Shown here piece by piece: positions 4,441-61,204 of a DNA stretch of 64,000 nt. The position numbers and the translations under genes were made by a program. The notes beneath the pieces were generated by a model. The model was given only the letters and a program-made list of their open reading frames with translations. It was not told the DNA's origin and made no database searches. Each line of letters starts with the position of its first letter. Positions within the stretch are counted from its first letter, which is position 1. Location of the stretch: positions 124,001 through 188,000 of IMG/VR virus record IMGVR_UViG_3300042519_004024; one strand, 5' to 3'.

Positions 4441-4448
4441 TATAAATA
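4441..4448 (-). promoter_or_regulatory. TATTTATA putative late-promoter motif
   Basis: 18 nt upstream of the ATG at 4422; member of a recurring motif family. Confidence 0.55.
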
Positions 4449-4484
4449 ATCAAAAGTTTATTTTATTTAAAATGATTTATAAAA

Positions 4485-5687
4485 TTATAGAGTTAAAGAA
4501 AAATCAATTCTATTTTTCCATTCACCATCTTTATTATTAACCCAATAAACCCATTTGTGTGGTTTTTCCGTAGTTTTTAAGTCTATTTTTAAATACTCCT
4601 GATATTTGTATAAATCTTGTCTATGTATAACATTCCCCATTTCATCTTCAACACCAATATAAATAAACTTAAAGTTATCAGTAAATGGGATATAAAGATT
4701 TAAATTATATGTTTTTTCAACTTTTTTATACCATTCAGTATTATCGTTTATTGGTGGAAATATTCCTTTAATTGTGTCTTGATGTAACTTTCTATTTTTA
4801 AAATTTATCCCGGCATAATCCTCATATTCTTTATGTGTTCTAACCGAACCTAATCCATATATTGTTAAATCAATATTATTATCTTCTTCTTGTAACATGT
4901 GTCTTAATCTACGTTTGGATTCATTATCCATTTCCCACCATTGTTTTTCAATAATACCATTGTTTTTATTTTCTTGATTAAAATCTGTCCAATGTTTTGT
5001 TCTACCTTCTCTTGTGTATTCGTGCCAAACAACAGTTTTATGTGGATGAAACAAATCATAACCTAAAGTGTATGATCTAATTGATAGACTAATTTCGTCA
5101 CCAGCAAAATAAATGTTTGGGTCGTACTTATATTCTTCACAATGTTTACCTAGTGTGAAAAAGAAATGTCCACTTACAAATCTAGCCGGTATTGGGGTTT
5201 CCAATGTTTGCCAATTTGGGATTGCGTGTGGTCTAAAAAGTATAGTACCACCTGGTGTGAAATTAGATGCAACCATCATATATGGTTCAACATTTAATAA
5301 TTGGTTATCTGATGGTCGGTACATCCCAGCATATGATGTGATGATTGGTTTTTCTGAACCTGTCATATTCATCATTTCAATCAATTCTATATCCCAATCT
5401 TGTAAAAATCTATGATGTGAATCTAACTGCATTGTATATTCTTCACCATCCCACAATTTTTGGATTTCTGAACGAGCCCAACAAAGTCCTTTACTTTCTG
5501 TCCAATGATAATCTAAAATTTTAAATCTCTCATCGTCTGTAAATTCTTCCATTGACTCAGTTTCATCTCTTTGCCAACAAACACCAAATGTTAAATTTTC
5601 AGGGTGTTTTGCTTTATTAATACAATCTCTAATTGTTGGTAAAAGTTCGGGATCCCTATAAGATGCGATTTGTACAAATATTTTCAT
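4485..5687 (-). CDS. GT60-like UDP-GlcNAc:polypeptide GlcNAc-transferase (GlcNAc/PF11397-like, Skp1 Gnt1/mucin-type initiating family)
   Basis: N-terminal IFVQIASYRDPEL..TI, SKGLCWARSEIQKLWDGEEYTMQLDSHHRF (DxH metal motif), GHFFF and YFAGDEISLSIRSYTLGYDLFHP match the family pattern as I recall it. Confidence 0.8.
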   Translation of the reverse strand: MKIFVQIASYRDPELLPTIRDCINKAKHPENLTFGVCWQRDETESMEEFTDDERFKILDYHWTESKGLCWARSEIQKLWDGEEYTMQLDSHHRFLQDWDIELIEMMNMTGSEKPIITSYAGMYRPSDNQLLNVEPYMMVASNFTPGGTILFRPHAIPNWQTLETPIPARFVSGHFFFTLGKHCEEYKYDPNIYFAGDEISLSIRSYTLGYDLFHPHKTVVWHEYTREGRTKHWTDFNQENKNNGIIEKQWWEMDNESKRRLRHMLQEEDNNIDLTIYGLGSVRTHKEYEDYAGINFKNRKLHQDTIKGIFPPINDNTEWYKKVEKTYNLNLYIPFTDNFKFIYIGVEDEMGNVIHRQDLYKYQEYLKIDLKTTEKPHKWVYWVNNKDGEWKNRIDFSLTL

Positions 5688-5732
5688 AATTAAAATATAT
5701 TCTAAAATATTTTAAAGTGAATTTAATATATC

Positions 5733-6953
5733 TTATAAATAATATAATACTTCTGCAGTTCCTGCAAATGTTGCGTTTGCACCTAATGGTGTTATACATA
5801 TCCACATTTCGTCAAGTGTTCCGTTAACATTAGAACCAACCCTAATTTGATTATCATCAATTTTTAATGTGGTAAGTGCTGATGTTCCTGATTCACCAAT
5901 AAGTGATGACATAATGTGTCCGTTTGTTGTAACAGTTGCAGTTGTTGTTCCAGTAAATAAACTATACTGAAATGGTGAGTTCGGTATATCCACCCAAGTT
6001 GGTGTTGTAGATATTGTTGGGTTATATTCAACTGTAACCAAATAGTTATCATTTGATGTATTTAAAATACTTAAACTACTATATTGTGATGTAACTGACT
6101 TATAACTTTGTTTAAGCCTATAACCAATATACGGATATTTTGTATCTGAAGTTTCTAAGGTCGTTGTTGTTTGGTGTTGTATACCTACTGTCGAATAAAG
6201 TCCGTTTAACGCTCCTTCGGTTGATACTTGACTACATAACATATCAAAGTATCCTGAACCAACACCTACTTGTCTTATTTCATACCTAATTGGTTGATTT
6301 GGTGATGACATGTAAACGGTAGGTATATTATTTGCCGAAGTATATTCTAAAAAATAAAATGTTTGACCCGATAATACCATTCCAAACCTCATCCTACCAA
6401 CACCTAACCATTGATAATCTACTGTCATTAGATTTGTGTTACTCCAATCAAAATTGTTTACGTCAAAGTCTGTATTATTCCAAGTTGTTGTATCGGCACT
6501 ATAAGTACAAGAACCACTTAAATAAATGTTAAATGTTATCGCACTTGTTACACCATTACTTTCTAAAAAGAACCCGTCAAATACCGAATTGTACGTGGAT
6601 GCCGTTGTTGATGTGAAACATCCAATTCGTTTAATTATATTTGTTTCTATTTGGAAGTTTGAAAAACTGCCTTCAAATAGTTGACTTTTACCTGGTTGAT
6701 AAATTGGGTGTGTTTTAGTTTGTCTAACAACCAAATCGTTATTTGCCGATGTTGACATTCTAACTCTCGCATATTGTTGGTTAAATACTGATGTTGCAGT
6801 ACCTGCGGTTACTTCATTGACCTGTAAAGGATTTTTATCGTAAACGTGTTTAATGTCTAATAAATTTTGAACCGCTGCGGTCCTTAATCTACCGAAAGCG
6901 TCCATATTTGGTCCGTCCGCGTACTTTATTGAGTTGTTAAAAATAAATGACAT
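5733..6953 (-). CDS. Hypothetical virion protein, beta-rich (possible lectin-like fold)
   Basis: 406 aa; N-terminal DAFGRLR motif typical of aquatic phage structural proteins; located in the fibre cluster. Confidence 0.5.
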   Translation of the reverse strand: MSFIFNNSIKYADGPNMDAFGRLRTAAVQNLLDIKHVYDKNPLQVNEVTAGTATSVFNQQYARVRMSTSANNDLVVRQTKTHPIYQPGKSQLFEGSFSNFQIETNIIKRIGCFTSTTASTYNSVFDGFFLESNGVTSAITFNIYLSGSCTYSADTTTWNNTDFDVNNFDWSNTNLMTVDYQWLGVGRMRFGMVLSGQTFYFLEYTSANNIPTVYMSSPNQPIRYEIRQVGVGSGYFDMLCSQVSTEGALNGLYSTVGIQHQTTTTLETSDTKYPYIGYRLKQSYKSVTSQYSSLSILNTSNDNYLVTVEYNPTISTTPTWVDIPNSPFQYSLFTGTTTATVTTNGHIMSSLIGESGTSALTTLKIDDNQIRVGSNVNGTLDEMWICITPLGANATFAGTAEVLYYL

Positions 6954-6957
6954 AATA

Positions 6958-8979
6958 TTAAATTAAATACCAATTTCCGTTTCTCACCATAATGGTGAGA
7001 GACATATAGTTTATATTCATATCAACATATGAATTTCCGTCAATCAAACCCGATGCCGGTGTTAATCTTATTCTAAAAAACCCGGAAGTTCCGGCTTCGT
7101 CTTTTATGACTAAATAATACCCGTCTCTTGACGTTGTTGTTGGTAATGTTAAATCAACATTTGATGATCCACTAACACCCCAATATGATTTATCCCAAGT
7201 TAAGGTTTGTGATGATGTTATCGCGCTTGTTACAAATACATTGATGGGTAAATTTTGATAGGTTGTTGCAGAAATTGTGTTTGCGGTTAAACCATCAGTA
7301 AATGAAGTAGACCCTGTTACAGTACCACCTGTAAATCCATTACTTAACGAACCATCACCCATAACATATTTTGATGATGTACCGCCTTGTGTAATAAATT
7401 TATCTGCATTTATGTATTGAAAATAATCTATTGAATTAGTACTAGTTCCTGTAAGCGTAGAACCTGGTTTATCATATATGGTGTTAATAATTGTGTAAAT
7501 ACCTGCAACACTTATAGGTGCTACATTATTCCCCGCCGTAACAAGCACTTGACTATTTAGCAATGTTAATGTAGTCAAAGATCCCGTTATCGTTATACCA
7601 TTACCACCTAAAGCAGTAACAATACAATCAACTATTGCTAAGTTACCTGCACTAGCTGATGGTGTTACTACACTATTACATCCCTTTATAATAACTTGTG
7701 CTGAGGCATTGCTTACTGATACTCCAACATTTTTATTACCGTTGATAATAGTGATGCCAGCACCAGAAATTTGAATACCTAAAGTACATTGCAGTTCTGA
7801 GTTAATAATTTCAACATAACCACTAGATGATTTGGTTACTTGAGTATCAATAGTACAGTTGCTTATATAAGCTTGAGCTGTTCCACTAATGACAAGGTTA
7901 CTCATCTTCAAACCTGAAATGCGAGTACCAGAACCTAATGTACCAATAGTTAATGTACCTGATAATAGAGTATTTGCTCCTGTTAACTCTGATGTTGAAA
8001 TTGTCGTATTAGTGTTAGCGACCGTAACATTTTCTGAATAAGTACCAGGGTGGATAATTATTGTTTTACGAGACCCAGTAAGTAAGGTTAATGCCTTAGT
8101 AATGGTCGCAACAGGATTAAGTAAATCACCATTACCTGTAGTATCATTTCCATCTATTTGACTTACGTGTATCTCATATTGAAAATTTGACGAAACATTA
8201 TAATATGTTGTTGCCGAAATTGTGTTTGCGGTTAATCCACCATCAATTTTAGTATTACCACTTACATGTAGTTTTTGTGTTGGTGTGGTTGTTCCAATAC
8301 CAACATAACCTCTTGTCGCACCTAAACCTTGTATGTGTATATCAGGTGTTGTCCCATTAGCGGTTTGTCCTGCATAAAATCTAATGTAATCCTCAGTTCC
8401 TGTGCCAGGTGGGTTTAAAAAATTAAAACCATATGTTTCATTACCAGCATAAAAGAATGCGTCACCAACTTTACCATATCCAGGATACGAGACATCATTC
8501 CACGCCCTCATACCTAATTCAAATCCCGCAATTGGTTTTGTTAAATATGGTGTAATTGCGACAGAAATTCTTGGTACGTTTGTATTCCCACTTAAAAGTA
8601 ACCTACCTCCAACACTTTCAGAATCATAATATAATCTACTTTGGATACCTCTAGCGTCAAAAACATATTGTGGTGTGCTTGTATTAATACCTATTCTTTT
8701 ATTTAAAATATCTAAAGTAATTCCGCTTGTTGATCCAAAATACACATCACCCTCATCTAACGGATTTATGTTTAATGGGGAACATGAATGAATATTTGAG
8801 ACATAAAAATCGGTAAAACAATATCCCGAAATAGAATCAAATACTTGTGATATTTTTGCCTTATATGATGAACCATCAGGATCTTGTGAGGTATCTCCTG
8901 TTATTACAATATGTATTAAATCGTCTGTAGTTACACCTGACGCTAATACTCTTTCTGTAAGTCTTTGATAAACTGCCAT
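6958..8979 (-). CDS. Modular tail fibre/spike: shared N-terminal anchor, GIGT motifs, putative right-handed beta-helix, small C-terminal domain
   Basis: IGINTSTPQYVFD and YVGIGTTTPTQKLHVSGN motifs; HVSQIDGNDTTGNG...NPVATITKAL...IIIHPGTYSENV is a typical beta-helix cap; ends LTLP...IKDEAG...IDG...GNWYLI. Confidence 0.7.
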   Translation of the reverse strand: MAVYQRLTERVLASGVTTDDLIHIVITGDTSQDPDGSSYKAKISQVFDSISGYCFTDFYVSNIHSCSPLNINPLDEGDVYFGSTSGITLDILNKRIGINTSTPQYVFDARGIQSRLYYDSESVGGRLLLSGNTNVPRISVAITPYLTKPIAGFELGMRAWNDVSYPGYGKVGDAFFYAGNETYGFNFLNPPGTGTEDYIRFYAGQTANGTTPDIHIQGLGATRGYVGIGTTTPTQKLHVSGNTKIDGGLTANTISATTYYNVSSNFQYEIHVSQIDGNDTTGNGDLLNPVATITKALTLLTGSRKTIIIHPGTYSENVTVANTNTTISTSELTGANTLLSGTLTIGTLGSGTRISGLKMSNLVISGTAQAYISNCTIDTQVTKSSSGYVEIINSELQCTLGIQISGAGITIINGNKNVGVSVSNASAQVIIKGCNSVVTPSASAGNLAIVDCIVTALGGNGITITGSLTTLTLLNSQVLVTAGNNVAPISVAGIYTIINTIYDKPGSTLTGTSTNSIDYFQYINADKFITQGGTSSKYVMGDGSLSNGFTGGTVTGSTSFTDGLTANTISATTYQNLPINVFVTSAITSSQTLTWDKSYWGVSGSSNVDLTLPTTTSRDGYYLVIKDEAGTSGFFRIRLTPASGLIDGNSYVDMNINYMSLTIMVRNGNWYLI

Positions 8980-8988
8980 GTTTTATTC

Positions 8989-8996
8989 TATAAATA
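8989..8996 (-). promoter_or_regulatory. TATTTATA putative late-promoter motif
   Basis: 9 nt upstream of the ATG at 8979. Confidence 0.55.
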
Positions 8997-9008
8997 CTTT
9001 AATATTAT

Positions 9009-9293
9009 TTATTGGAATAAATAATTATTACCGTCCATAAAAGTGAAGTAATTGGCGTCTTGATAAATTTTTTGTCCACATATTAAGAAGTTATTTGCAA
9101 TACACCCATTAGTATCGATTATTTTAACATAAAGAATTTGTTCATAAGGAAAATAATCATCGGTATCAAATATCACACTTGGTGGAATAAATGTTGTTCC
9201 TGAAACATAAAAACAAGACGTGTTAGTTGCATCACATATATAAACGTCATATGGTGCCTGCCCACTTGTTACTCCTGTTATTTCTATATTCAT
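9009..9293 (-). CDS. Small single-domain SprB/Ig-like virion protein (paralogue of 2040..2321)
   Basis: SGQAPYDVYICD...LYVKIIDTNGC...FMDGNNYLFQ. Confidence 0.7.
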   Translation of the reverse strand: MNIEITGVTSGQAPYDVYICDATNTSCFYVSGTTFIPPSVIFDTDDYFPYEQILYVKIIDTNGCIANNFLICGQKIYQDANYFTFMDGNNYLFQ

Positions 9294-9294
9294 T

Positions 9295-15882: not shown

Positions 15883-15890
15883 TATAAATA
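15883..15890 (-). promoter_or_regulatory. TATTTATA putative late-promoter motif
   Basis: 10 nt upstream of the ATG at 15872. Confidence 0.55.
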
Positions 15891-24642: not shown

Positions 24643-24715
24643 TTGCCTTTTTAAAAATAAATAGTTATGTTCCTATTTTTTAAAAATAGGTGTTATAGAA
24701 ATAAAATAAAGAATC

Positions 24716-27021: not shown

Positions 27022-27068
27022 ATTAAATAAATATAATGTTGTGAATTTTTGAATAAATAGATATAAAA

Positions 27069-30656: not shown

Positions 30657-30693
30657 ATTGTTGAGATTTTGTTCCTTGTTTTAATAAATATTG

Positions 30694-34160: not shown

Positions 34161-34188
34161 ATTATAAGTGATTTTTAATAAATGTCAA
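34161..34188 (-). promoter_or_regulatory. Perfect sigma70-type promoter TTGACA-N16-TATAAT upstream of the SSB gene
   Basis: Minus strand TTGACA (34188-34183), 16-nt spacer, TATAAT (34166-34161), 39 nt before the ATG at 34121. Confidence 0.7.
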
Positions 34189-35130: not shown

Positions 35131-35138
35131 TATAAATA
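35131..35138 (-). promoter_or_regulatory. TATTTATA putative late-promoter motif
   Basis: 14 nt upstream of the ATG at 35116. Confidence 0.55.
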
Positions 35139-48804: not shown

Positions 48805-48819
48805 TTAGTCTATTTTATT

Positions 48820-48827
48820 TATAAATA
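48820..48827 (-). promoter_or_regulatory. TATTTATA putative late-promoter motif
   Basis: 15 nt upstream of the ATG at 48804. Confidence 0.55.
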
Positions 48828-50698: not shown

Positions 50699-50706
50699 TA
50701 TAAATA
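50699..50706 (-). promoter_or_regulatory. TATTTATA putative late-promoter motif
   Basis: 15 nt upstream of the ATG at 50683. Confidence 0.55.
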
Positions 50707-50905: not shown

Positions 50906-51608
50906 CTCTTTCTCCAGACGGGGCTATAATACTTCTTTTAAGATTTATTGATGGTTCAGCTTCGTTTAAAAATTTTCTTAGATTTTTAGAGTCTGATATT
51001 GGCATTTGATTAACAAATGATGCTATTTTCATTCTATCGGTATCACCATTTAATTCAACAATATGTTTTTCTAATCTTTTAGTCACTATTGGTGCAACCA
51101 TACCTTGTGGATACGAATCTTTTAATTTATCAATTTCATTAGTATCACCTAAAGTTAAAAGTTTACATTTAACTGTTGTTTTAGAAACCGGCAATACAAA
51201 CTCAAATAATCCATTATCGTTAGGTTTATGGATTACTTCAGTAAAATTTATTTCATCTAATTTTAGATTATATTCAAATTTTCTATTTGTTTGTGGGTCT
51301 ATTGCAGATATTAAATAATCTGAACCAAAAGAAGTGTTTCTTAAAAACAATAATATTGCTTTAGCATCCGCATCTATTAATTGGTTCACGTCGAACCCCG
51401 GTTCATAGATTTTGTTTTTTAATAAAGTAGTGATTAATCCATCAATTGGTATATTTTGTGACATTAAAAGATTCTCGTCTGATGCGGTTAAATAACCAAC
51501 TTTTACTGACTCTTTTCTTGGTTTATAAAATATTCCTTTTGAAGGTAACTTGACTACGTCGTGTGGTAAGTTAAAATCTTGTTGTCCATAAATTGCTGAT
51601 TGATCCAT
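50850..51608 (-). CDS. gp26-like baseplate hub assembly/tail assembly chaperone
   Basis: VVKLPSKGIFY, YLTASDENLL, LRNTSFGSDY, ends FGVEFFRPFF; located between tube and tape measure. Confidence 0.75.
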   Translation of the reverse strand: MDQSAIYGQQDFNLPHDVVKLPSKGIFYKPRKESVKVGYLTASDENLLMSQNIPIDGLITTLLKNKIYEPGFDVNQLIDADAKAILLFLRNTSFGSDYLISAIDPQTNRKFEYNLKLDEINFTEVIHKPNDNGLFEFVLPVSKTTVKCKLLTLGDTNEIDKLKDSYPQGMVAPIVTKRLEKHIVELNGDTDRMKIASFVNQMPISDSKNLRKFLNEAEPSINLKRSIIAPSGERVDVDIAFGVEFFRPFFSI

Positions 51609-51705: not shown

Positions 51706-52194
51706 TTAGTAAACTAAAATACATCTATCAGGTCTAAGAGATGCTTTAACCGTGATTAATCCATCTTCACTATATCCTAATGAATCAAAGTCAACACTAG
51801 TTAAAAATACACCTTGTAGAATCCATTTTTCAACCGCAACTCCTGTTGGGTCTAACATTTCTAAGTCAATATCTTTTTTATAACCAGCAGCATAACCCAT
51901 ACGTCCTGTTACTGATTCAGCATGTAAACGAACCCACTCCATAAGTGCTTGTGAAGCTGAAGGACCGATTGGATCACGAAAAGTAACATCCATAGCCTCC
52001 CAATTGAATCGTCCTGCAACATATGTAGAAGTGTTTAAGAATGGAATCTCAACATCTTTAATTGTAACTTTAGGTCTTGTGGTTGACTCAACATACCACG
52101 AGTTAATCCCCAAAGAAGATGGGAATGTCAATATAAACCTATTTTTTCTTTTAGGTTCGTACTGAAAGGGCATTTTCATTAATAAATCAGCCAT
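51706..52194 (-). CDS. Tail tube protein (T4 gp19-like)
   Basis: EPKRKNRF, RPKV, YVAGRFNWEAMDVTFRDP, YKKDI.LEMLDPTG..VEKW.L.G. Confidence 0.9.
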   Translation of the reverse strand: MADLLMKMPFQYEPKRKNRFILTFPSSLGINSWYVESTTRPKVTIKDVEIPFLNTSTYVAGRFNWEAMDVTFRDPIGPSASQALMEWVRLHAESVTGRMGYAAGYKKDIDLEMLDPTGVAVEKWILQGVFLTSVDFDSLGYSEDGLITVKASLRPDRCILVY

Positions 52195-52224
52195 GTCTTA
52201 TTTTTTTAATTTGTTTTATTTATT

Positions 52225-52232
52225 TATAAATA
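52225..52232 (-). promoter_or_regulatory. TATTTATA putative late-promoter motif
   Basis: 30 nt upstream of the tube ATG at 52194. Confidence 0.55.
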
Positions 52233-52306: not shown

Positions 52307-53182
52307 TTAAACTTCTTTTTTTTCTCCTCCTTTAGTTAAATATAATCTTATAGGTTTTTTTTCATATTCTTTTTCTACAAAATCTTTAATCTTTTCCATA
52401 TTTCTAGGGTCATCATCTGAAAAACCAATAATTGGGATTATTTCTTGGTTGATAACATCATTTTTAAAATAACTCTTCTTTCCAATTTCATTAGCCAACT
52501 CTATACAATATGAAACAAATTTTCTAATTGCAATTATTTTACCTTCTTCGGGACTCGCAGCACTACCCTTACCAAAAGTAACAGGTTCAAAACGACATAA
52601 ATCAAGATACTCCATTATTATGTCTTTATCATTAAAATTTAAATTAACCGATTCATCAATTGGGTTATCTGCCCAATTTCTATATGTCTTTAAAGAATTA
52701 ACGACTTCTTTACTATTAATACCATTATGATTGGATAGTATATAATTAAGGACAGCTTCTTTTAATGTTTCAGGATTATGTCCCCTTGCTGTGATAATTG
52801 CAAATACAGAACCACCATTTATACACTCAACAAAATCATTCCAAGAAGGTCCTGGACTTGCCGACATTGCATCAATAATAAATCTCTTATCCCCTTTAAT
52901 ACCAAAATTTCTAAAAGGATCAGTTGCATAACCAACAACAGTTGTACCTTTATATGAAAAAGGTTCCTCACCTATTTGGTGTCTATGTTCCGCAAAATCT
53001 TCGGTAGACATAGGGATTTCTTCTTCATTTTCTGTCATTAAAATGATTGTAGTTGGCATAAAAACGATGTTGTCGTCCCAGTCAAAACCATAATATTTAG
53101 AATCGGGAGTACCTTCGGCGGTTATCCCCTCATTAATATTTCTACGGTTAACATAGTTTAATACATGTTTTTTAATATCCAT
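52307..53182 (-). CDS. HAD-superfamily-like hydrolase/phosphatase
   Basis: Motif I FDWDDNI, motif II IITARGH, motif IV IGFSDDDPRN. Confidence 0.6.
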   Translation of the reverse strand: MDIKKHVLNYVNRRNINEGITAEGTPDSKYYGFDWDDNIVFMPTTIILMTENEEEIPMSTEDFAEHRHQIGEEPFSYKGTTVVGYATDPFRNFGIKGDKRFIIDAMSASPGPSWNDFVECINGGSVFAIITARGHNPETLKEAVLNYILSNHNGINSKEVVNSLKTYRNWADNPIDESVNLNFNDKDIIMEYLDLCRFEPVTFGKGSAASPEEGKIIAIRKFVSYCIELANEIGKKSYFKNDVINQEIIPIIGFSDDDPRNMEKIKDFVEKEYEKKPIRLYLTKGGEKKEV

Positions 53183-53319
53183 TATTTTTGAAGTTTTGAC
53201 AAAAGTTTTTCAAGTTGTTTTTCGGTGATTATTATATTTTGTTTTTTAACCGAAAATGTTTTAGGACTTTTTTGATTGTCTCCAATAGATTCTTTAATAA
53301 GTTTTTTCTCTATTTTCAT
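53182..53319 (-). CDS. 45-aa basic peptide (not in the ORF track)
   Basis: MKIEKKLIKESIGDNQKSPKTFSVKKQNIIITEKQLEKLLSKLQK; TAATG overlap with the HAD gene; own TATTTATA motif. Confidence 0.65.
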   Translation of the reverse strand: MKIEKKLIKESIGDNQKSPKTFSVKKQNIIITEKQLEKLLSKLQK

Positions 53320-53332: not shown

Positions 53333-53340
53333 TATAAATA
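53333..53340 (-). promoter_or_regulatory. TATTTATA putative late-promoter motif
   Basis: 13 nt upstream of the ATG at 53319. Confidence 0.55.
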
Positions 53341-53383: not shown

Positions 53384-56300
53384 TTATACATCATCAAAAG
53401 ATGCTCCTGTTGGTGTAATAACGAATTCGATATCAATGTATTCTAATGCTCTTGTAGGTTTTAAGAAAATTTTACCTGTTAAAGTATTTGAATCCAAATC
53501 TTCAGGAGTGTTTGATACTGTCACACGGAAATCTATCAAACCTCTATCTCTTCTGATTCCATCTAATATTGGGTTAACTGAATCCAAGAAGTCTTGTCTT
53601 ACTTTGTTATCGTTTTGTTCGAATAGTAATCTAATAGCCACTGCTGAAATCAACTTACGTGCTTGTAGTAACAATCTTCTAACGTTAATTCTATCAAGTG
53701 CAGACTCTCTAATTTGTAAAGTTTTGTTACCCCAAATCACTGTACCAACATCAGAGAAAGTTGCGATTGGGTTAATTCTACCTTTATAAAGTGTGTCTCT
53801 ATCGTCTTGTGTCAATTTACGTCTTGCTCTAATTGCGTTTACCAAACCTCTTGTGTAACCTGCAGATGCGAACCAAGGGAATGCGATATTGTCTGTCAAA
53901 GCTAAGTTCTTAACAACTTCAGAAGTTGGTGGAATGTATATTTGTGTATTGTTAACCGAATCTCTTGTTAAAATCCAAGGGTAATAAGTGGCGGTATAGT
54001 TAGAGTCTATTCCTGTTGCTTCTAAGTTATCTACCGTCTGTTGAGGGAAAATTAACCCTTCCTCAATATCGTTATATGTTGGTAAAAACAAATCAAAGTC
54101 AGGTGTAGTACAGATATAAATAGAGTCCGCTCTATCAGTTTCAATCATATCAATAGCGTCCTCAACAAGATTTGAGTTATTAACATAATCAATACCAGGT
54201 GTTGCAAATACATTTATGTTTGTTGCTTCAGGGTTAGCAAAAGTACTTTGTCCCCATTTGTATGCGTAAAAGTCAGTATTTGCCCAATTTTCTTGGTTTG
54301 GTCCTGAAATCGCTTTAAATGCTCCCCAACCCGTTGCGGTAGGATAAGTTATACTTGCTTCTGCACCATATTTAAATCCTGTTTGTCCTAATGCGAATGA
54401 ATCTGAATTTGTTCTATATTCTCTATATATGTCCCATCCATCAAAACCACCATAAGCCATTACCGTAAATTTACGAGTATTAAGTCTATAATATGGACTT
54501 GAACTATCTGTAGGTTCAGAGTTAAATGACCCGGCACCTACTTCAAACGCCGACTGTCCTGATGTTACATAACCATTTGCGATTGTTACAACAGTTGCTC
54601 CGCTATCCATGTGGAAACCTTTTGTTAAATAACCCCAAGCCATACCTGTGGTATCAGTACCTAAATTTGCAGGTAACTGCTTTCCTTTGTATTCAAAGAA
54701 ATCGTAATCAATTCCTGATATATTAGAAATACCTAAGTATGCCTTTCTTGGATTTTCACCACTTGAAATAACAGGGTTGTCACCTCCGTTAGATGAACCA
54801 AAAGGTGGGTTATACACAACGTCACCAGGTTTGAAATATTTAGTTTTATATACTAAGAATGGTGGTGTTGCATTTGCGTATTCTCTTGAGATAAATCCTT
54901 CAAAACCACAAGGTAGTGCGTCTATCGGGGCTTCATCACTCATTTCTAACATTACGTATTTAGACTTAACTTGGTATTCTCCGTTTGATGTTCCTATCTT
55001 ATTTGCTACGTAATTATTTTGACTTGGGTCTAATGAACAATTAGTGAAACTTTCAATAACTCTTGGGTTTTGATCGGTATCATAAAAATCTCTAATAAAT
55101 ACGTCAAACGTACTACTATTAAATGATATATTACCTATAGACATTTTTACAAGTCTATTAGCTGCGTTACCGTCAGAAATTAAAACAAACTTAAATAATT
55201 TATAAACTTTATTACCTCTAAGTTCTGAAACTAAATACGGTGTTTCAGGTGTTTGATATTGTTCTAAATAGAAACCTATTGAGTCGGTATCTAATGATCT
55301 CGCTCCTGGTAATTCGATAATATCACAGTCTAATCCTCTAATTCTACCTAATCTATATCCACTTGTTAACAAACTAGTATACGTCTCCTCGACAAATAAA
55401 GGAACCTCATTTCTGTCTTTACCAAAATTACTTCTACCAAATACTTTAGAAATAAAGTTCTTATCAGTAGATAACATTGATGTTTGGAATTCAAAATTGT
55501 CCCCGTCATAGGTTACCCCTGAAATAAGGAATGGTGAGTATGGGTTTTTAGTAACCGCAGAATAAGAACCTGTACAAATCATTTGTACATCAGTTGTACC
55601 CGTTACTTCATAATTCGGTCCTGCTTGTGTTGCACTGTAGTTAGATATACCTCTTGATCTTAAAGTTGCAACAACTAAATCATCATAATCTAAATAAGGC
55701 GTACCTGAATAGTTTGTGTTGTAAAAAACACAAGAACCTGAGAAATTACCTCCTGATCCCGATAGTGTGTTTACCGCGGCACCAAAACCTTGTCCGTAAT
55801 AACTACTTACATCGTTTACTTGTGAGTAATTAAACAATGCGTAATACCAAGCATCGTTAGTAGATGCTGATAAGTTAGCCAAAGATAGATTAACATTATT
55901 AACCCCAAAGTTTTCAGTGTATGCAGTAATAGTACCCGTACCATTAAGTGTTGTACCCGTTACTAAGTTAAATGTTCCTGCACTAACAGTACCCCAAAAG
56001 ACTGCCGATGAACCTGAAGAAGGTGAGCCAACGGCAAATAAATTTACTTGGTTTGATATATAAGTTCTTAAATCTTGATCAATAGTTGATGTACCACCAT
56101 TAAATTCAGTATATGTATTATAAAAATTATTATTTACATTAATAATACCAGGGACTGACATATTATATGCAATATTTGAACTTGTTCCTGTTGTTCCTGT
56201 AAATGTTAATACTGTGGATGATACTCCTGTTGCTGCGATTGTTGCCGGATTAACGTTACCTATTGTCGTTATTGACCAAGAAGGTCCTGCGTCATATCCT

Positions 56301-56599
56301 GATAAACCAAGAACTCTTGTAACAAATAATTGATTCGATTGTTGCAAATATGCCTTTGTAATATACGCTAATTCATATTTAGGTATTTGTGTATTAACAA
56401 ATTTTTCAGGACTAGTTCCTCCAAAATATACTTGGAACTCGTCAAAATTAGTTATGAATATTGGTTCAAACGCCGGACCCTGAAGAGTTTCTCCAGCCAA
56501 ACCTAAAGTTGTTACACCTACACTTTGTGCAACAAAAGTTAAATCTCTTTCTGACGTATAAACCCCAGGTGAAACGAAAACTTTGTTTGATGATGCCAT
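53384..56599 (-). CDS. Tail sheath protein (T4 gp18-like) with large insertion domains
   Basis: SPGVYTSERDLT, LFVTRV, WFASAGYTRG, RINPI, WGNKTLQ, RINVRRL, PTRALEYIDIEF. Confidence 0.95.
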   Translation of the reverse strand: MASSNKVFVSPGVYTSERDLTFVAQSVGVTTLGLAGETLQGPAFEPIFITNFDEFQVYFGGTSPEKFVNTQIPKYELAYITKAYLQQSNQLFVTRVLGLSGYDAGPSWSITTIGNVNPATIAATGVSSTVLTFTGTTGTSSNIAYNMSVPGIINVNNNFYNTYTEFNGGTSTIDQDLRTYISNQVNLFAVGSPSSGSSAVFWGTVSAGTFNLVTGTTLNGTGTITAYTENFGVNNVNLSLANLSASTNDAWYYALFNYSQVNDVSSYYGQGFGAAVNTLSGSGGNFSGSCVFYNTNYSGTPYLDYDDLVVATLRSRGISNYSATQAGPNYEVTGTTDVQMICTGSYSAVTKNPYSPFLISGVTYDGDNFEFQTSMLSTDKNFISKVFGRSNFGKDRNEVPLFVEETYTSLLTSGYRLGRIRGLDCDIIELPGARSLDTDSIGFYLEQYQTPETPYLVSELRGNKVYKLFKFVLISDGNAANRLVKMSIGNISFNSSTFDVFIRDFYDTDQNPRVIESFTNCSLDPSQNNYVANKIGTSNGEYQVKSKYVMLEMSDEAPIDALPCGFEGFISREYANATPPFLVYKTKYFKPGDVVYNPPFGSSNGGDNPVISSGENPRKAYLGISNISGIDYDFFEYKGKQLPANLGTDTTGMAWGYLTKGFHMDSGATVVTIANGYVTSGQSAFEVGAGSFNSEPTDSSSPYYRLNTRKFTVMAYGGFDGWDIYREYRTNSDSFALGQTGFKYGAEASITYPTATGWGAFKAISGPNQENWANTDFYAYKWGQSTFANPEATNINVFATPGIDYVNNSNLVEDAIDMIETDRADSIYICTTPDFDLFLPTYNDIEEGLIFPQQTVDNLEATGIDSNYTATYYPWILTRDSVNNTQIYIPPTSEVVKNLALTDNIAFPWFASAGYTRGLVNAIRARRKLTQDDRDTLYKGRINPIATFSDVGTVIWGNKTLQIRESALDRINVRRLLLQARKLISAVAIRLLFEQNDNKVRQDFLDSVNPILDGIRRDRGLIDFRVTVSNTPEDLDSNTLTGKIFLKPTRALEYIDIEFVITPTGASFDDV

Positions 56600-56637: not shown

Positions 56638-56645
56638 TATAAATA
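56638..56645 (-). promoter_or_regulatory. TATTTATA putative late-promoter motif
   Basis: 38 nt upstream of the sheath ATG at 56599. Confidence 0.55.
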
Positions 56646-56687
56646 CCTTGAAAAAAACCAAAAAACTTTACATTTAAATAATATTTA

Positions 56688-56730: not shown

Positions 56731-56740
56731 TTTATTAAAA

Positions 56741-58122: not shown

Positions 58123-58124
58123 TA

Positions 58125-58640
58125 TTATATTCCTTTAAATTCGTTATCATTAACAGGAGCTCCTATTATTGAACGATAAAATGGTTTGTAACCACCATAA
58201 GTATGTTTATTATCTGATAGTACACGACCATCATTTACTACTGAATAATATCTAACCCTCGTTTCCGTTTCGTAATACCCTATGTAATCACCATAGTTAA
58301 TATCAACACCTAAATTATCCAATTCTTTTTGGTAAACACCAACCTTAACATTACCAGGCTCTGTTTGTGATAATTTTGATGATCCGTAATCCGCATTTGT
58401 AGGAGCCTCTACCTGAACATATCCTTTAAATTCTACCGGAGGTAAGAATTGTATTGCATTCTCTAACGCTTCCCCATAAACATCGTCATTATTTGTTCGT
58501 TGTCTATCAACTCTGTATAAAACTAAAGTAAAATTCATATCTCCACCAAGCCATTCCTCACCCATAGAAATGTCTAAGTCAAAATCTTCTTCAGAGAAGA
58601 ATTTGTTTAATCTAGTAATTGGAACTTTATTTTGTGTCAT
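58125..58640 (-). CDS. Neck/head-closure protein (T4 gp14-like)
   Basis: FTLVLYRVD....DDVYGEA....FLPPVE, GDYIGY...RYY.V; typical position. Confidence 0.55.
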   Translation of the reverse strand: MTQNKVPITRLNKFFSEEDFDLDISMGEEWLGGDMNFTLVLYRVDRQRTNNDDVYGEALENAIQFLPPVEFKGYVQVEAPTNADYGSSKLSQTEPGNVKVGVYQKELDNLGVDINYGDYIGYYETETRVRYYSVVNDGRVLSDNKHTYGGYKPFYRSIIGAPVNDNEFKGI

Positions 58641-58644
58641 ATAA

Positions 58645-58652
58645 TATAAATA
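58645..58652 (-). promoter_or_regulatory. TATTTATA putative late-promoter motif
   Basis: 4 nt upstream of the ATG at 58640. Confidence 0.5.
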
Positions 58653-58686
58653 CTTTGATTGATTTTTTATTAATATTTACTATTTT

Positions 58687-58694
58687 TATTTATA
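58687..58694 (+). promoter_or_regulatory. TATTTATA motif on the plus strand
   Basis: 5 nt upstream of the probable ATG at 58700. Confidence 0.45.
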
Positions 58695-58699
58695 ATATA

Positions 58700-60463
58700 A
58701 TGGAAGAATTAATTTCAAAAACTCCCGAAACAAGGGCTCTTCAACTATTAGACGAATATGAAGGGTCAAATAACTATATCCTGTCGTTAAAACACAAAAA
58801 ACAAAATAGTAAATCATTTACTCCCACAAGATCACAAGCAGAATACATAATCAACTTTCATGGAAGAACCCCAAAAGTGGCAAAAAAATGGGTAAAGCTG
58901 GATGCTTACTTTGGAAAAAAGATGATGGAAGATAAAATGTACACAAAAGAACCATCAGAAATTTACGTTGAGAAGTTGTTGGTTGAAAAAGATAAATCAT
59001 ATCATATTTGGGGTAAAATATTTTCAGGTGATACTATACACGATTTCTGGGTTCCTAAATCTGCCCTTATTAAAGATAACGAAGTAAAAAATGTCGTTAT
59101 TGAATACTCAAAGTATGATCATAGATCACCTATGGAACACCAAAAAGAGGCTATCGAAAAACTTGTAAGAAACAAAAAGTTTATTTTGGCTGATGATATG
59201 GGACTTGGAAAAACTACATCAACAATTATTTCTGCATTAGAGACGGGAGCAAAAAAAATATTAATTGTTTGTCCAGCATCTTTAAAAATAAATTGGCAAC
59301 GTGAAATTGAAAATTATTCAGACAGAACCATTTATATTGCAGAAGGTAAAAAATTTTCAAGTGAACACGATTTTGTAATAATTAATTATGATATTTTAAA
59401 AAACTTTCACGACCCAAAAAAGAAAGACGAATCCATCATTTTAAATTCTAAATTTGATTTAGTTATTATGGATGAAGCCCATATGATATCAAACCCACAA
59501 GCACAAAGAACAAAAATAGTTAATGACTTATGTGATAAGGTTGAAAGGGTTTGGTTACTAACAGGAACTCCGATGACATCAAGACCAATGAATTATTATA
59601 ATCTTTTAAGTTTAGTTGAAAGCCCCGTTGCGGCAAATTGGATGGCTTACGCAAGAAGGTACTGTAACGGATTTCAATTTAGTGTAGGTAAAAGAAAAGT
59701 ATGGAACGTAACAGGGGCATCTAACTTAGATGAGTTGAGAGAACGAACACAATCTCACATTTTAAGAAGATTAAAAGAAGATGTTTTAGATTTACCTGAT
59801 AAAATTATCACACCTGTTTATTTGAGACTAAAGTCTAAGGACTACGAAGAACTTATGGGTGAGTATTTTAATTGGTATGATAATAACTCAGAAGAGTCTT
59901 CATCTTTAACTATTCAGTTTGGTAAATTAATGAAAGTTAGAAAAGTAATTGCTGAAGAAAAAGTAAAAAATACAATTGAATTGGCTGAAAATATTATTGA
60001 ACAAGGAAAAAAAGTTATCATATTTACAAATTTTACTGACACCTTAAGAACCATTTATGAACATTTTGGAAAACAGGCGGTATATTTAGACGGTAGTTGT
60101 TCAAAACCTCATAGACAAAAAGCAGTGGACGATTTTCAAGAAAACGATAAAATAAAAGTTTTTGTTGGTAATTTAAAGGCTGCGGGTGTGGGTATTACTT
60201 TAACATCTGCAGAAGCAGTAATCATGAATGATTTATCATTTGTTCCTGCAGAACATGCACAAGCAGAGGATCGATCACACAGAATCGGACAGAAAAAATC
60301 AACGTCAGTTTATTATCCATTATTTGAAAACACAATAGAAGGTGCAATTTATGATATTTTAAATAGAAAGAAAAAAATCATATCAACAGTAATGGGAGAT
60401 GATATGATGGACGACGCATCTTCAATTGAAGAAATGTTAAATATGATTTCTAATAAGAGGTGA
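58700..60463 (+). CDS. SNF2/SWI2-family helicase (SMARCAL1/HARP-like); likely start 58700
   Basis: ILADDMGLGKT, VCPASLKINW, IMDEAH, LTGTP, AAGVGITLT, QAEDRSHRIGQ. Confidence 0.9.
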   Translation: MEELISKTPETRALQLLDEYEGSNNYILSLKHKKQNSKSFTPTRSQAEYIINFHGRTPKVAKKWVKLDAYFGKKMMEDKMYTKEPSEIYVEKLLVEKDKSYHIWGKIFSGDTIHDFWVPKSALIKDNEVKNVVIEYSKYDHRSPMEHQKEAIEKLVRNKKFILADDMGLGKTTSTIISALETGAKKILIVCPASLKINWQREIENYSDRTIYIAEGKKFSSEHDFVIINYDILKNFHDPKKKDESIILNSKFDLVIMDEAHMISNPQAQRTKIVNDLCDKVERVWLLTGTPMTSRPMNYYNLLSLVESPVAANWMAYARRYCNGFQFSVGKRKVWNVTGASNLDELRERTQSHILRRLKEDVLDLPDKIITPVYLRLKSKDYEELMGEYFNWYDNNSEESSSLTIQFGKLMKVRKVIAEEKVKNTIELAENIIEQGKKVIIFTNFTDTLRTIYEHFGKQAVYLDGSCSKPHRQKAVDDFQENDKIKVFVGNLKAAGVGITLTSAEAVIMNDLSFVPAEHAQAEDRSHRIGQKKSTSVYYPLFENTIEGAIYDILNRKKKIISTVMGDDMMDDASSIEEMLNMISNKR

Positions 60464-60471
60464 TATTTATA
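60464..60471 (+). promoter_or_regulatory. TATTTATA motif on the plus strand
   Basis: 3 nt upstream of the ATG at 60475. Confidence 0.5.
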
Positions 60472-60474
60472 GTT

Positions 60475-61194
60475 ATGATATTTAAAAACTTTAATCAAAA
60501 AATAACCCTTTTAGAAACAAAATTAAAAACACATTCGTTTTCAAATGAATTGTTAATTACTGAAATTAAAAAAATTTCAATAGAAAAATTACCTTATGAG
60601 TTTGATGATTTAGATATGTTTATTGACGGTGAAACTATGAGAACTCACTATAATAAACATTACAAAGGTTACGTTGAAAAATTAAATTCTGAATTAGAAA
60701 AAATAAAAGGTAAAGATTTAGATTTAGAAGAGATTGTAAGTAGTATCACAAAATTTAACACGAAAGTTAGAAATAACGGTGGTGGAGCATTTAACCACGC
60801 ACTATTTTGGAAAATGTTAACACCTAAAAAAACAAAATTAGAAAATCCTTTATTATATAAAATAGAATCAACATTTGGTTCATTTGAAAAATTTAAACAA
60901 AAATTTGAAGAGGAAGCAAAATCAAGATTCGGTTCTGGTTGGGTTTGGTTAGTAATTACTAAAGCAAATAGATTAAAAATTATAACCACCGCAAATCAAG
61001 ATAATCCATTAATGTTAAAAGGTAGTAATAAAGCGTACCCACTATTAGGATTGGATTTATGGGAACATGCATATTATTTAAAATATAAAAACGAAAGAGA
61101 TAGATACATCCATAATTTTTGGAAAGTAGTTAATTGGGATTTTGTTTCCGATTTATATTCAACACAAGTAAAATTAAATAAAGTTAATCAGTAA
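60475..61194 (+). CDS. sodA: Mn/Fe superoxide dismutase (Mn-type signature) with N-terminal extension
   Basis: KLPY...TMRTHYNKH..Y, RNNGGGAFNHALFW, FGSGWVWL, TANQDNP, LDLWEHAYY; all four metal ligands present. Confidence 0.92.
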   Translation: MIFKNFNQKITLLETKLKTHSFSNELLITEIKKISIEKLPYEFDDLDMFIDGETMRTHYNKHYKGYVEKLNSELEKIKGKDLDLEEIVSSITKFNTKVRNNGGGAFNHALFWKMLTPKKTKLENPLLYKIESTFGSFEKFKQKFEEEAKSRFGSGWVWLVITKANRLKIITTANQDNPLMLKGSNKAYPLLGLDLWEHAYYLKYKNERDRYIHNFWKVVNWDFVSDLYSTQVKLNKVNQ

Positions 61195-61196
61195 GA

Positions 61197-61204
61197 TATT
61201 TATA
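61197..61204 (+). promoter_or_regulatory. TATTTATA motif on the plus strand
   Basis: 13 nt upstream of the ATG at 61218. Confidence 0.55.

What the first reader, a model, noticed from the sequence alone, without database searches (positions are those of the whole stretch)
4441..61204. Strand-consistent TATTTATA upstream motif, the reverse complement of the T4 late promoter
Seen: exact sense-strand TATTTATA 3-38 nt before starts on both strands (minus: 4441, 8989, 15883, 35131, 48820, 50699, 52225, 53333, 56638, 58645; plus: 58687, 60464, 61197) and TATTTAT(T/C) variants at 24657, 27027, 30684 and 51635. It is absent before SSB, recA and nrdJ. Known: the T4 late promoter is TATAAATA in sense orientation. 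Several copies are only 3-5 nt from the ATG, which suggests initiation within or right after the motif (initiator-like or leaderless). Caveat: AT richness makes chance octamers common; the argument rests on position and orientation.
Basis: partly seen in the sequence, partly recalled or inferred. Interest (0 to 1): 0.6.

Follow-up and report, generated by a model that had tools for sequence, protein, structure and literature searches.

The report
Phage-specific TATTTAT promoter element
The repeated TATTTATA word is real and is very probably the core of a phage-specific promoter that heads most structural-gene operons of an uncultured freshwater jumbo phage of Bacteroidota, likely read by one of the phage's own sigma factors.

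Summary
Observation confirmed. All listed copies exist. In the window, 12 exact sense TATTTATA lie in 41 upstream 45-nt stretches, against 0.9±1.0 in dinucleotide shuffles. In the whole 214-kb contig z exceeds 10, while the reverse complement is not enriched. Any single substitution in TATTTAT abolishes the enrichment; position 8 is A/T/C, never G. The word is kept upstream of orthologous genes in 80 metagenomic relatives while flanks diverge: sheath 34/34, tube 21/21.

The host is a Bacteroidota member. The contig also carries canonical TTTG/TAnnTTTG promoters and a third TTGACA-N17-TATAtT class. There are two phage sigma genes and no phage RNA polymerase.

TATTTATN sits in the same register as the host −7 box: N3-4 before ATG in about a third of cases (leaderless register), otherwise N4 before a conserved AAA (6-11-nt A-rich leaders).

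A cultured distant relative, Microcystis phage Mel-JY01, has the same oriented motif before its structural genes. It has a homologue of the divergent sigma but not of the canonical one.

Best reading: a −10-like, −35-less middle/late promoter read through a phage sigma. It is analogous to the T4 late promoter, matching it 6/8 in the same orientation, but is not shown to be a member of that system. No 5'-end data were obtainable.

The parts
4441..4448 (-). TATTTATA, 18 nt before ATG of ORF 2326-4422 (698 aa, unknown)
   Evidence: kept with identical surroundings in the 292-kb relative G001, protein 49% identical
8989..8996 (-). TATTTATA, 9 nt before ATG of tail protein ORF 6958-8979; a second TATTTATT lies at 9016-9023
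   Evidence: comparison with G001 was out of register and is inconclusive
15883..15890 (-). TATTTATA, 10 nt before ATG of ORF 14964-15872
   Evidence: kept in G001 as TATTTATT
24656..24663 (-). TATTTATT, 13 nt before ATG of the 1670-aa ORF 19630-24642
   Evidence: kept in G001
27026..27033 (-). TATTTATT, 4 nt before ATG of baseplate wedge ORF 26557-27021 (leaderless register); a second copy lies at 27052-27059, just after a hairpin plus T-run
   Evidence: both copies kept in G001
30683..30690 (-). TATTTATT, 26 nt before ATG of DnaB-like helicase 29277-30656
   Evidence: kept in G001 with diverged flanks. This shows the class is not limited to structural genes.
34161..34188 (-). A different class: TTGACA-N16-TATAAT, 39 nt before the SSB gene 33264-34121. 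It heads the SSB / recA / exonuclease / 150-aa unannotated ORF / DnaB / nrdJ block.
   Evidence: kept in G001 as TTGACA-N16-TATATT
35131..35138 (-). TATTTATA, 14 nt before ATG of the 75-aa ORF 34889-35116, which precedes the 2337-aa ORF
   Evidence: kept in G001
48820..48827 (-). TATTTATA (part of the palindrome TATTTATAAATA), 15 nt before ATG of the 2129-aa ORF 42415-48804
   Evidence: kept in L060, protein 44% identical
50699..50706 (-). TATTTATA, 15 nt before ATG of ORF 48845-50683 (612 aa)
   Evidence: kept in 3 of 3 distinct relatives, down to 34% protein identity
51634..51641 (-). TATTTATC, 25 nt before the baseplate hub ORF 50850-51608; probably not the functional element
   Evidence: Kept in only 4 of 22 relatives. 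The conserved block lies about 12 nt downstream (TTATTTTTTAAGAAAAA-like).
52225..52232 (-). TATTTATA (palindromic TATTTATAAATA), 30 nt before ATG of the tail tube gene 51706-52194
   Evidence: kept in 21 of 21 distinct relatives
53333..53340 (-). TATTTATA just after a hairpin, 13 nt before ATG of the 45-aa ORF 53182-53319, which overlaps the start of ORF 52307-53182
   Evidence: kept in 17 of 30 distinct relatives
56638..56645 (-). TATTTATA, 38 nt before ATG of the tail sheath gene 53384-56599. It is followed by a conserved ATAnAAAAnTAAA and preceded at 13-15 nt by a conserved AAAGTTTTTTG.
   Evidence: kept in 34 of 34 distinct relatives at 77-100% protein identity, while the rest of the leader varies
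58645..58652 (-). TATTTATA, 4 nt before ATG of ORF 58125-58640 (leaderless register)
   Evidence: Kept in 20 of 20 distinct relatives, 19 of them at 4-5 nt from the 7-mer. It is kept even in two loci whose upstream context is replaced by a terminator.
58659..58694 (+). Helicase (58700-60463) upstream region: TTGATT-N16-TATTTT (58659-58686) abutting TATTTATA (58687-58694, 5 nt before ATG)
   Evidence: TATTTAT is kept in only 11 of 23 relatives. TTGATT and a TATATT-like hexamer are kept throughout, so this gene probably belongs to the TTGACA class.
60464..60471 (+). TATTTATA overlapping the stop codon of the helicase gene, 3 nt before ATG of ORF 60475-61194 (leaderless register)
   Evidence: It is kept wherever the same gene junction exists (8 of 22); the other relatives have a different N-terminal arrangement.
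61197..61204 (+). TATTTATA, 13 nt before ATG of ORF 61218-62339 (weak head-tail adaptor match)
   Evidence: kept in 20 of 20 distinct relatives with diverged flanks

Best explanation
TATTTAT followed by A, T or C is the core, −10-like element of a phage-specific promoter class. I put the probability that it is a promoter element at about 0.85.

Where it occurs. The phage is an uncultured freshwater jumbo myophage of a Bacteroidota host. Its relatives carry ribosomal protein bS21, the group described by Chen et al. 2022. The element has no conserved −35 partner. It heads most operons of the structural module (sheath, tube, baseplate and giant ORFs; in a complete relative also prohead protease, the capsid operon and bS21). 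It also heads some other genes, such as DnaB and small paralogous genes.

Inferred start site. By register, the 8-mer occupies about −12 to −5 and transcription starts 4-5 nt after it. In about a third of sites that base is the A of the ATG, giving leaderless mRNA. In the rest it is the first A of a conserved AAA, giving 6-11-nt A-rich leaders, or about 30 nt for sheath and tube.

Inferred reader. The phage has no RNA polymerase of its own, so host core polymerase must be redirected by a phage-encoded specificity factor. The most likely one (about 0.5) is the divergent 249-aa sigma-like protein at contig 212955-213704. The alternative (about 0.2) is the canonical 271-aa sigma at contig 108525-109340.

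Shown: the motif, its specificity, orientation, spacing and conservation.
For: Enrichment and orientation; repeated in 80 relatives (257 sense TATTTATA against 41 TATAAATA) and in the 99%-complete relative G001.

Base-by-base specificity: each single substitution in positions 1-7 removes the enrichment, and G is excluded at position 8.

Phylogenetic footprints.

The motif marks operon starts. In the window, 16 of 25 gene starts with an upstream gap of at least 20 nt carry it, against 1 of 17 with shorter gaps.

Register:
- The distance from the 7-mer to the ATG is bimodal, at 4-5 nt and 11-16 nt.
- In the second class, positions 6-8 after the 7-mer are A in 22-24 of 25 sites.
- Host-type TAnnTTTG-N4-ATG promoters occur in the same genome. 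The published −7 box lies at −12 to −5, with 4-5 nt to the start (PMC6847099; PMC9723704).
- In three relatives TATTTA replaces TATATT exactly 17 nt after TTGACA before the DNA polymerase gene.

Polymerase and sigma genes:
- No RNA polymerase beta or T7-like polymerase in the contig or in G001.
- Two sigma genes are kept in relatives.
- The divergent one has a sigma fold. All top Foldseek hits are sigma factors, although E is 0.016 or worse. It has weak gp55-family matches.

Cross-phylum conservation: Microcystis phage Mel-JY01 has ATATTTAT 21 times in sense and 3 times antisense upstream, ahead of SD-bearing leaders. It has a homologue of the divergent sigma (E 3e-11) and none of the canonical one.

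Link to late expression: the genes behind the motif in G001 (bS21, the capsid operon, protease, sheath) are those reported as highly expressed late in this phage group (PMC9723584).
Against: - No 5'-end data. Only short assembled fragments of the sheath gene were found in four river or freshwater metatranscriptomes.
- Gene starts come from a simple longest-ORF rule.
- The relatives are not independent samples, and some motif-bearing genes are paralogues.
- The divergent sigma gene lies at the end of an operon that itself starts with the motif. That needs a bootstrap by read-through or basal transcription.
- In Mel-JY01 the canonical host SigA could play the role of the canonical phage sigma, so that comparison does not exclude the canonical-sigma alternative.
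- The sigma-fold model is of moderate quality (pLDDT 65), and sequence searches against solved structures found nothing.
- DnaB also carries the motif, so 'late' is not strict.
Confidence: 0.65

Rival explanations
1. The motif is a promoter, but it is read by a canonical sigma-70-type factor. In Bacteroidota hosts that would be the phage's own 271-aa sigma, and in Microcystis the host SigA. It would be a strong −10-only variant of the TTGACA-N17-TATAtT class.
For: - The canonical phage sigma keeps the melting residues and the −35-reading residues of E. coli-type sigmas.
- It is itself behind a host-type promoter, so it is made early.
- Many sites read TATATTTAT, which contains TATATT.
- TATTTA substitutes for TATATT at N17 from TTGACA in three relatives.
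- Mel-JY01 lacks this sigma, but its host has a canonical one.
Against: - In the TATTTA register, the T at −7 that canonical sigmas need is an A.
- No TGn extension and no −35 element accompany the motif.
- Fewer than half of the sites have the TATATT reading.
- The 7-mer is far stricter than a canonical −10 box.
Confidence: 0.2
2. The motif is a degenerate host −7 box read by the host primary sigma alone, with no phage factor.
For: It sits in the same register as TAnnTTTG and shares T-12, A-11, T-8 and T-6.
Against: - T-7 and G-5 are nearly invariant in the host consensus (PMC6847099). Here position 6 is A, and G is excluded at position 8.
- The variant closer to the host box (TATTTTTA) is not enriched.
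- The genome holds a separate, canonical TTTG/TAnnTTTG class confined to the early region.
- The same motif is used by a phage of a cyanobacterium.
- None of the six promoter motifs found in F. psychrophilum is described as resembling it.
Confidence: 0.07
3. The word acts at the RNA level, as a 5'-leader element for translation (for example for ribosomes carrying phage bS21) or as a processing site, rather than as a promoter.
For: - It is always on the sense strand.
- It is followed by a conserved A-rich stretch.
- The relatives encode bS21.
Against: - The distance to the ATG ranges from 3 to 39 nt, and up to 65 nt in Mel-JY01, where an ordinary SD follows it.
- It usually comes straight after terminator-like hairpins, at the start of operons.
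- It can take the −10 place behind TTGACA.
Confidence: 0.07
4. The word is the binding site of another phage DNA-binding protein (an activator or repressor), or the promoter of an unrecognised, highly divergent phage polymerase.
For: - Many large ORFs have no family match: 2337, 2129 and 1670 aa.
- The contig is only about 71% complete.
Against: - The complete relative G001 also lacks detectable polymerase domains.
- The fixed register to start codons, and to TTGACA, fits a sigma-type −10 element.
Confidence: 0.08
5. Chance occurrence of an AT-only octamer in AT-rich intergenic DNA.
For: The plain window count is only mildly above shuffles: 25 against 16.9.
Against:: z exceeds 10 in upstream stretches, the reverse complement is not enriched, substitutions are not tolerated, and the word is conserved 34/34, 21/21, 20/20 and 20/20 before orthologues.
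Confidence: 0.01

Closest known systems
T4-type late promoter (TATAAATA at about −10, read by gp55 with gp33 and the gp45 clamp; PMC7892883, PMC2988020)
   Same: - An 8-bp AT-only element with no −35 partner, ahead of virion genes.
- The phage is a distant T4-like myovirus: sheath, tube, baseplate wedge, UvsX-like and gp32-like genes.
- It carries a small divergent sigma with weak gp55 similarity.
- In the same orientation 6 of 8 bases agree.
   Different: - The central AA is TT, and TATAAATA itself is not enriched.
- The candidate sigma has an extra C-terminal helical domain and only marginal gp55 similarity.
- No gp45 clamp domain was found, and gp33 was not searched.
- About a third of the sites are in a leaderless register.
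Bacteroidota primary-sigma promoter (−33 TTTG / −7 TAnnTTTG; PMC6847099, PMC9723704)
   Same: - Same apparent position, −12 to −5.
- Shares T-12, A-11, T-8 and T-6.
- Same N4 spacing to the ATG in leaderless cases.
- Bona fide examples coexist in the same genome.
   Different: - A instead of the invariant T at −7, and no G at −5.
- No −33 element.
- A different set of genes.
- Also present in a cyanophage relative.
Phage-encoded sigma cascades in general (for example Bacillus phage SPO1 gp28 and gp33/34; named from memory, not tested here)
   Same: Host-type early promoters, phage sigma genes among the early genes, and distinct later promoter words.
   Different: Here one phage sigma is a canonical primary-like sigma brought into a host whose own sigma reads a different grammar. 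The other is gp55-like. The assignments are untested.
bS21-encoding freshwater Bacteroidetes phages (Chen et al. 2022, PMC9723584)
   Same: - Same kind of genome: up to about 300 kb, freshwater, a Bacteroidota host signal, and bS21 next to the protease, capsid and portal genes in relatives G001 and G002.
- The genes behind the motif are those the paper reports as late and highly expressed.
   Different: That paper contains no promoter, motif or sigma analysis (0 occurrences of these words). This contig ends before the head/bS21 module.

Membership tests
T4-type late transcription system | TATAAATA on the non-template strand at about −10 | tested here: not met
   Sense TATAAATA occurs 10 times against 5.9±2.3 expected. 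The enriched word is TATTTATA, which matches at 6 of 8 positions.
T4-type late transcription system | No −35 element | tested here: met
   No informative column within 40 nt upstream of the motif in either spacing class.
T4-type late transcription system | gp55-family sigma | tested here: inconclusive
   phrog_234 gives E 5e-4 to 3e-3 on the 249-aa ORF in three genomes, but the same model also rings in 8 of 14 control genomes. hhalign to T4 gp55 gives 31% identity over 54 residues at probability 5%. The fold hits are sigma factors.
T4-type late transcription system | gp45 sliding clamp and gp33 co-activator | tested here: inconclusive
   PF09116 gives no hit above cut-off in the contig, G001 or G002. 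gp33 was not searched. The proteins of this phage are very divergent.
T4-type late transcription system | Dependence of late transcription on DNA replication | not testable with these tools
   Needs infection experiments.
Bacteroidota primary-sigma promoter | −7 box with near-invariant T-12, A-11, T-8, T-7, T-6 and G-5 | tested here: not met
   Position 6 of the motif is A, and the T variant is not enriched. G at position 8 occurs 0 times among the sense-upstream single-substitution variants. Consensus from PMC6847099.
Bacteroidota primary-sigma promoter | Box placed 4-5 nt upstream of the transcription start | tested here: inconclusive
   The spacing to the ATG (N3-4 from the 8-mer) and to the conserved AAA (N4) fits, but no start site was measured.
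Extended −10 promoters of canonical sigma-70 | TGn immediately upstream of a TATAAT-like hexamer with T at −7 | tested here: not met
   No TG at the required positions. The base before the motif is A, G or C and almost never T (none in 18 and one in 25 aligned sites). The hexamer TATTTA has A at −7.
Phage-sigma-dependent promoter class (generic) | A phage-encoded sigma, a motif distinct from the host's, and association with a functional gene class | tested here: met
   Two sigma genes; a motif distinct from the host class; the motif heads the structural operons.
Phage-sigma-dependent promoter class (generic) | Direct recognition of the motif by that sigma with host core polymerase | not testable with these tools
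   There is only co-occurrence: Mel-JY01 has the motif and the divergent sigma. LR756508 has a 25%-identical homologue and no motif.

The most novel reading that the evidence does not exclude
The phage runs three promoter grammars in one Bacteroidota cell:
- Host TTTG/TAnnTTTG for early genes.
- Canonical TTGACA/TATAtT for replication genes and tRNAs. This class would be readable only because the phage imports its own E. coli-type primary sigma into a host whose sigma cannot read such promoters.
- TATTTAT(H), read by a gp55-like sigma that is older than the host switch, since a cyanophage relative keeps both this sigma and the motif.

The TATTTAT promoters would be built to give leaderless or at most 11-nt A-rich-leader late mRNAs. 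Those would be the preferred substrates of ribosomes carrying the phage's bS21. The result would be a coupled, phage-private channel for transcription and translation.
Probability: 0.2. Interest if true: 0.8.

Novelty: new variant of a known kind. Interest (0 to 1): 0.55.

Why it matters
These jumbo phages are very abundant in lakes: one conserved gene alone gave over 8000 cluster representatives. Nothing is known about how they are transcribed.

A strict, conserved 7-8-bp promoter word has several uses:
- It predicts operons and timing in hundreds of uncultured genomes.
- It offers a compact orthogonal promoter/sigma pair for Bacteroidota, a phylum where standard promoters do not work.
- It points to a cultured system, Microcystis phage Mel-JY01, in which the prediction can be tested directly.
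- It makes testable the published idea that phage bS21 favours late phage messages, because it predicts what the 5' ends of those messages look like.

Tried and rejected
- Megablast of 12 kb of the window against GenBank phages gave no match.
- Literature searches for the word with 'promoter', 'phage' or 'late promoter' found nothing relevant except the T4 template-strand oligonucleotide. There is no paper on Mel-JY01 in the library. The Ma-LMM01 transcriptome paper reports no phage-specific motif and concerns a different phage.
- RNA evidence: four metatranscriptome runs hold only 5-9% of the sampled words. Laying them gave short assembled pieces inside the sheath gene and no information on ends.
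- My own EM motif finder drifted to G-rich terminator and coding composition and was abandoned. Discriminative k-mer counts were used instead.
- A sequence search of the divergent sigma against solved structures gave no meaningful hit.
- hhalign of the divergent sigma to T4 gp55 and to the canonical phage sigma gave the right regions but very low probability, because the alignment is shallow.
- A candidate internal TTGACA promoter ahead of the divergent sigma gene lies in a conserved PhoH-like coding segment, so its conservation says nothing.
- A −33-like TTTG at fixed spacing from the motif was not found in general. The conserved GTTTTTTG before the sheath promoter is specific to that gene.
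- Rejected: the idea that the motif is the T4 late promoter read backwards; chance; an SD-like ribosome site.

Full report
**What the window is.** The window is bases 124001-188000 of a single 213,924-bp viral contig. IMG/VR flags it as a provirus, and CheckV estimates it at about 71% complete. GC content is about 31%.

It encodes a T4-like contractile tail and a replication module:
- Tail: sheath, tube, baseplate hub and wedge.
- Replication: ribonucleotide reductase, DnaB-like helicase, exonuclease, UvsX/RecA-like recombinase, gp32-like SSB, a second helicase, and (just outside the window) a family-B DNA polymerase.
- Three giant ORFs without family matches.

There are 24 tRNA genes outside the window. 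More than 230 related contigs exist in IMG/VR, one of them 291,867 bp and 99% complete (G001).

G001 and a 219,553-bp relative, G002, carry ribosomal protein bS21; in G001 it lies next to the prohead protease, capsid and portal genes. That is the hallmark of the freshwater Bacteroidetes 'bS21 phages' of Chen et al. 2022 (PMC9723584). The contig studied here stops just where that head module begins in G001.

**The observation.** The raw count of TATTTATA in the window is unremarkable: 25 against 16.9±4.3. The placement is not:
- Window: 12 exact copies in 41 upstream 45-nt stretches, against 0.91±0.95 in 1000 dinucleotide-preserving shuffles of those same AT-rich stretches. The reverse complement is at background.
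- Whole contig: sense TATTTATA 26 against 4.4±2.0, and ATATTTAT 32 against 4.3±2.0. TATAAATA is 10 against 5.9, and ATAAATAT is 2 against 5.7.

A single-substitution scan shows that each of the seven bases of TATTTAT is needed. For example, the sense-upstream/total counts are 26/74 for TATTTATA, 5/129 for TATTTTTA, 7/88 for TATTAATA and 5/107 for TATTTAAA. The eighth base is A (26), T (19) or C (6), and never G. G001 gives the same picture.

Inside coding sequence, both the word and its complement are about 40% rarer than in codon-shuffled genes (z about −3). This fits avoidance of stray promoters, but it is weak evidence.

**Conservation.** In 80 related loci, sense TATTTATA occurs 257 times in 1032 upstream stretches, against 41 for TATAAATA. 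Before orthologous genes the 7-mer is kept while the flanks diverge:

| Gene | Distinct upstream sequences keeping the 7-mer |
|---|---|
| Sheath | 34 of 34 |
| Tube | 21 of 21 |
| ORF 58125-58640 | 20 of 20 |
| ORF 61218-62339 | 20 of 20 |
| ORF 48845-50683 | 3 of 3 (down to 34% protein identity) |

Sources. In two loci the whole region upstream of the 58125 orthologue has been replaced by a terminator, and yet TATTTAT-N4-ATG is still there.

The copies at 4441, 15883, 24656, 27026, 27052, 30683 and 35131 are kept in G001. Three copies are doubtful:
- 51634 is kept in 4 of 22 relatives. A T-rich variant 12 nt downstream is what is conserved there.
- 5734 is not conserved.
- 58687, before the helicase, is kept in 11 of 23. 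What is conserved there is TTGATT-N16-TATATT.

**Context: three promoter-like grammars.** The contig also holds canonical Bacteroidota promoters, TTTG-N18-22-TAhhTTTG. There are 11 in sense upstream regions against 0.47±0.70 expected. Nearly all lie before small genes at 4.6-108 kb, outside the structural module. With the lack of SD sequences and the bS21 link, this places the host in Bacteroidota.

A third class is TTGACA-N16-18-TATAtT, with a sharp spacing peak at 17. It precedes the SSB gene in the window (34161-34188), the DNA polymerase gene, the tRNA cluster and several others. It is conserved before SSB and the polymerase in relatives.

**Register and the leaderless question.** The distance from the end of TATTTAT to the ATG is bimodal. 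In this contig 4-5 nt occurs 14 times and 11-16 nt occurs 20 times; in G001 the figures are 23 and 29.

The host-type boxes in the same genome show TAnnTTTG-N4-ATG seven times. In F. johnsoniae the −7 box spans −12 to −5, with 4-5 nt to the start site (PMC6847099). So TATTTATN-N3/4-ATG puts the A of the ATG at the expected start.

In the longer-spaced class, the three bases that follow TATTTAT-N5 are A in 22, 24 and 23 of 25 sites. That is the same predicted +1, and it gives leaders of 6-11 nt.

In three relatives TATTTA takes the place of TATATT exactly 17 nt after TTGACA before the polymerase gene. This again puts it in the −10 register.

Roughly 30% of the predicted phage promoters are in a leaderless register. 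The published figure for F. psychrophilum mRNAs is 5.5% (PMC9723704). All of this is inference from spacing. No start site was measured.

**Who reads it.** Neither this contig nor the complete relative has a detectable multisubunit or T7-like RNA polymerase. Both have two sigma genes.

The first is a 271-aa primary-like sigma with regions 1.2, 2 and 4.
- It keeps the aromatic melting residues and the region-4.2 residues that read TTGACA in E. coli-type sigmas.
- It lies behind a host-type promoter, so it should be made early.
- It is the natural reader of the TTGACA class, which the host sigma should not recognise (PMC6847099).

The second is a 249-aa protein, highly conserved in this phage family.
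- Family scans miss it.
- It has a region-2-like segment, a two-domain helical model (pLDDT 65), Foldseek hits that are all sigma factors (best E 0.016), and weak gp55-family matches.

**A cross-phylum relative.** The best cultured relative is Microcystis phage Mel-JY01. It has the same order of terminase, protease, bS21, capsid, PhoH, sheath and tube genes.
- It carries (A)TATTTAT(H) before its structural genes, 21 times in sense and 3 times antisense, now 0-65 nt ahead of ordinary SD-bearing leaders.
- It has a homologue of the divergent sigma (31% identity, E 3e-11) and none of the canonical one.
- Because that host is a cyanobacterium, the motif cannot be a peculiarity of Bacteroidota sigma or of Bacteroidota translation. 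It travels with the phage lineage.

A still more distant 484-kb phage has a 25%-identical homologue and no such motif; other words recur there.

The canonical-sigma alternative remains open, because Microcystis supplies a canonical sigma itself.

**Relation to T4.** TATTTATA is arithmetically the reverse complement of TATAAATA. Read in the same direction, the two differ only in the central two bases. The system resembles T4 late transcription in its logic: a −35-less AT octamer, virion genes, a small phage sigma, and a T4-like virion. Membership is not shown. The T4 word itself is not enriched, the gp55 similarity is marginal, no gp45 clamp domain was found, and gp33 was not searched.

**Limits.**
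- Gene starts come from a longest-ORF heuristic, corrected by hand at two genes.
- The relatives share ancestry, so counts across them are not independent.
- Some motif-bearing genes are paralogues.
- The timing class is inferred from gene function and from the expression data published for the phage group.

Noticed in passing
contig 4.6-108 kb (loci L085-L091), e.g. contig 37879-37925, 44050-44095, 58391-58435: Canonical Bacteroidota promoters (TTTG-N19-21-TAnnTTTG) stand before many small early-region genes. Seven of them are exactly 4 nt before the ATG, so host-type leaderless messages are predicted too.
   Followed up: partly
window 34161-34188 (-) and 58659-58686 (+); contig 25866, 38561, 70468, 72989, 90546, 116722, 118520, 189638: A third promoter-like class, TTGACA-N17-TATAtT, stands before SSB, the helicase, the DNA polymerase, the tRNA cluster and others. 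It is conserved in relatives. The host sigma should not read it, and the phage's own canonical 271-aa sigma (contig 108525-109340) probably does.
   Followed up: partly
contig 212955-213704 (+) (L002:1444-2193): A 249-aa protein, highly conserved in this phage family (over 8000 cluster representatives, all annotated 'hypothetical'). It is a divergent two-domain sigma-like protein that Pfam and PHROGs miss.
   Followed up: partly
contig about 70.4-82.2 kb (L088, L089): 24 tRNA genes on the minus strand. The cluster starts right after a TTGACA/TATTAT promoter-like site.
   Followed up: no
contig 908-5316, 16723-17361, 20654-21139, 47911-48282, 73023-75033, 88698-89072, 118635-119126: Thirteen ORFs share one of two conserved N-termini (MKKIIRLTESDL... 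or MKxLIKKILKEE...). Many have their own TATTTAT site and terminator. They are paralogous cassettes of unknown role.
   Followed up: no
window 56659-56669 (-): AAAGTTTTTTG, 13-15 nt upstream of the sheath TATTTATA, is conserved in nearly all relatives. It is not seen at other TATTTAT sites and may be a gene-specific regulator site.
   Followed up: no
window 48816-48827 and 52221-52232: Two sites are the 12-bp palindrome TATTTATAAATA, which contains the motif on both strands and also the T4 word TATAAATA in sense.
   Followed up: no
window 35143-42156, 42415-48804, 19630-24642 (all -): Three giant ORFs (2337, 2129 and 1670 aa) have essentially no PHROG match. Two of them head or follow TATTTAT sites within the tail module.
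   Followed up: no
whole contig, coding regions: TATTTAT and its reverse complement are both about 40% rarer inside genes than after codon shuffling (z about −3).
   Followed up: partly
L131 (LR756508 186444-228417): The 484-kb uncultured relative lacks TATTTAT upstream of its genes. Words such as ACTTAAAG or ACTTTAAG recur there instead and may be its counterpart motif.
   Followed up: no
contig ends; G001 144145 onward: IMG/VR labels the contig 'provirus', but no host flank or integrase was noticed. It simply breaks off before the head/bS21 module present in G001.
   Followed up: partly
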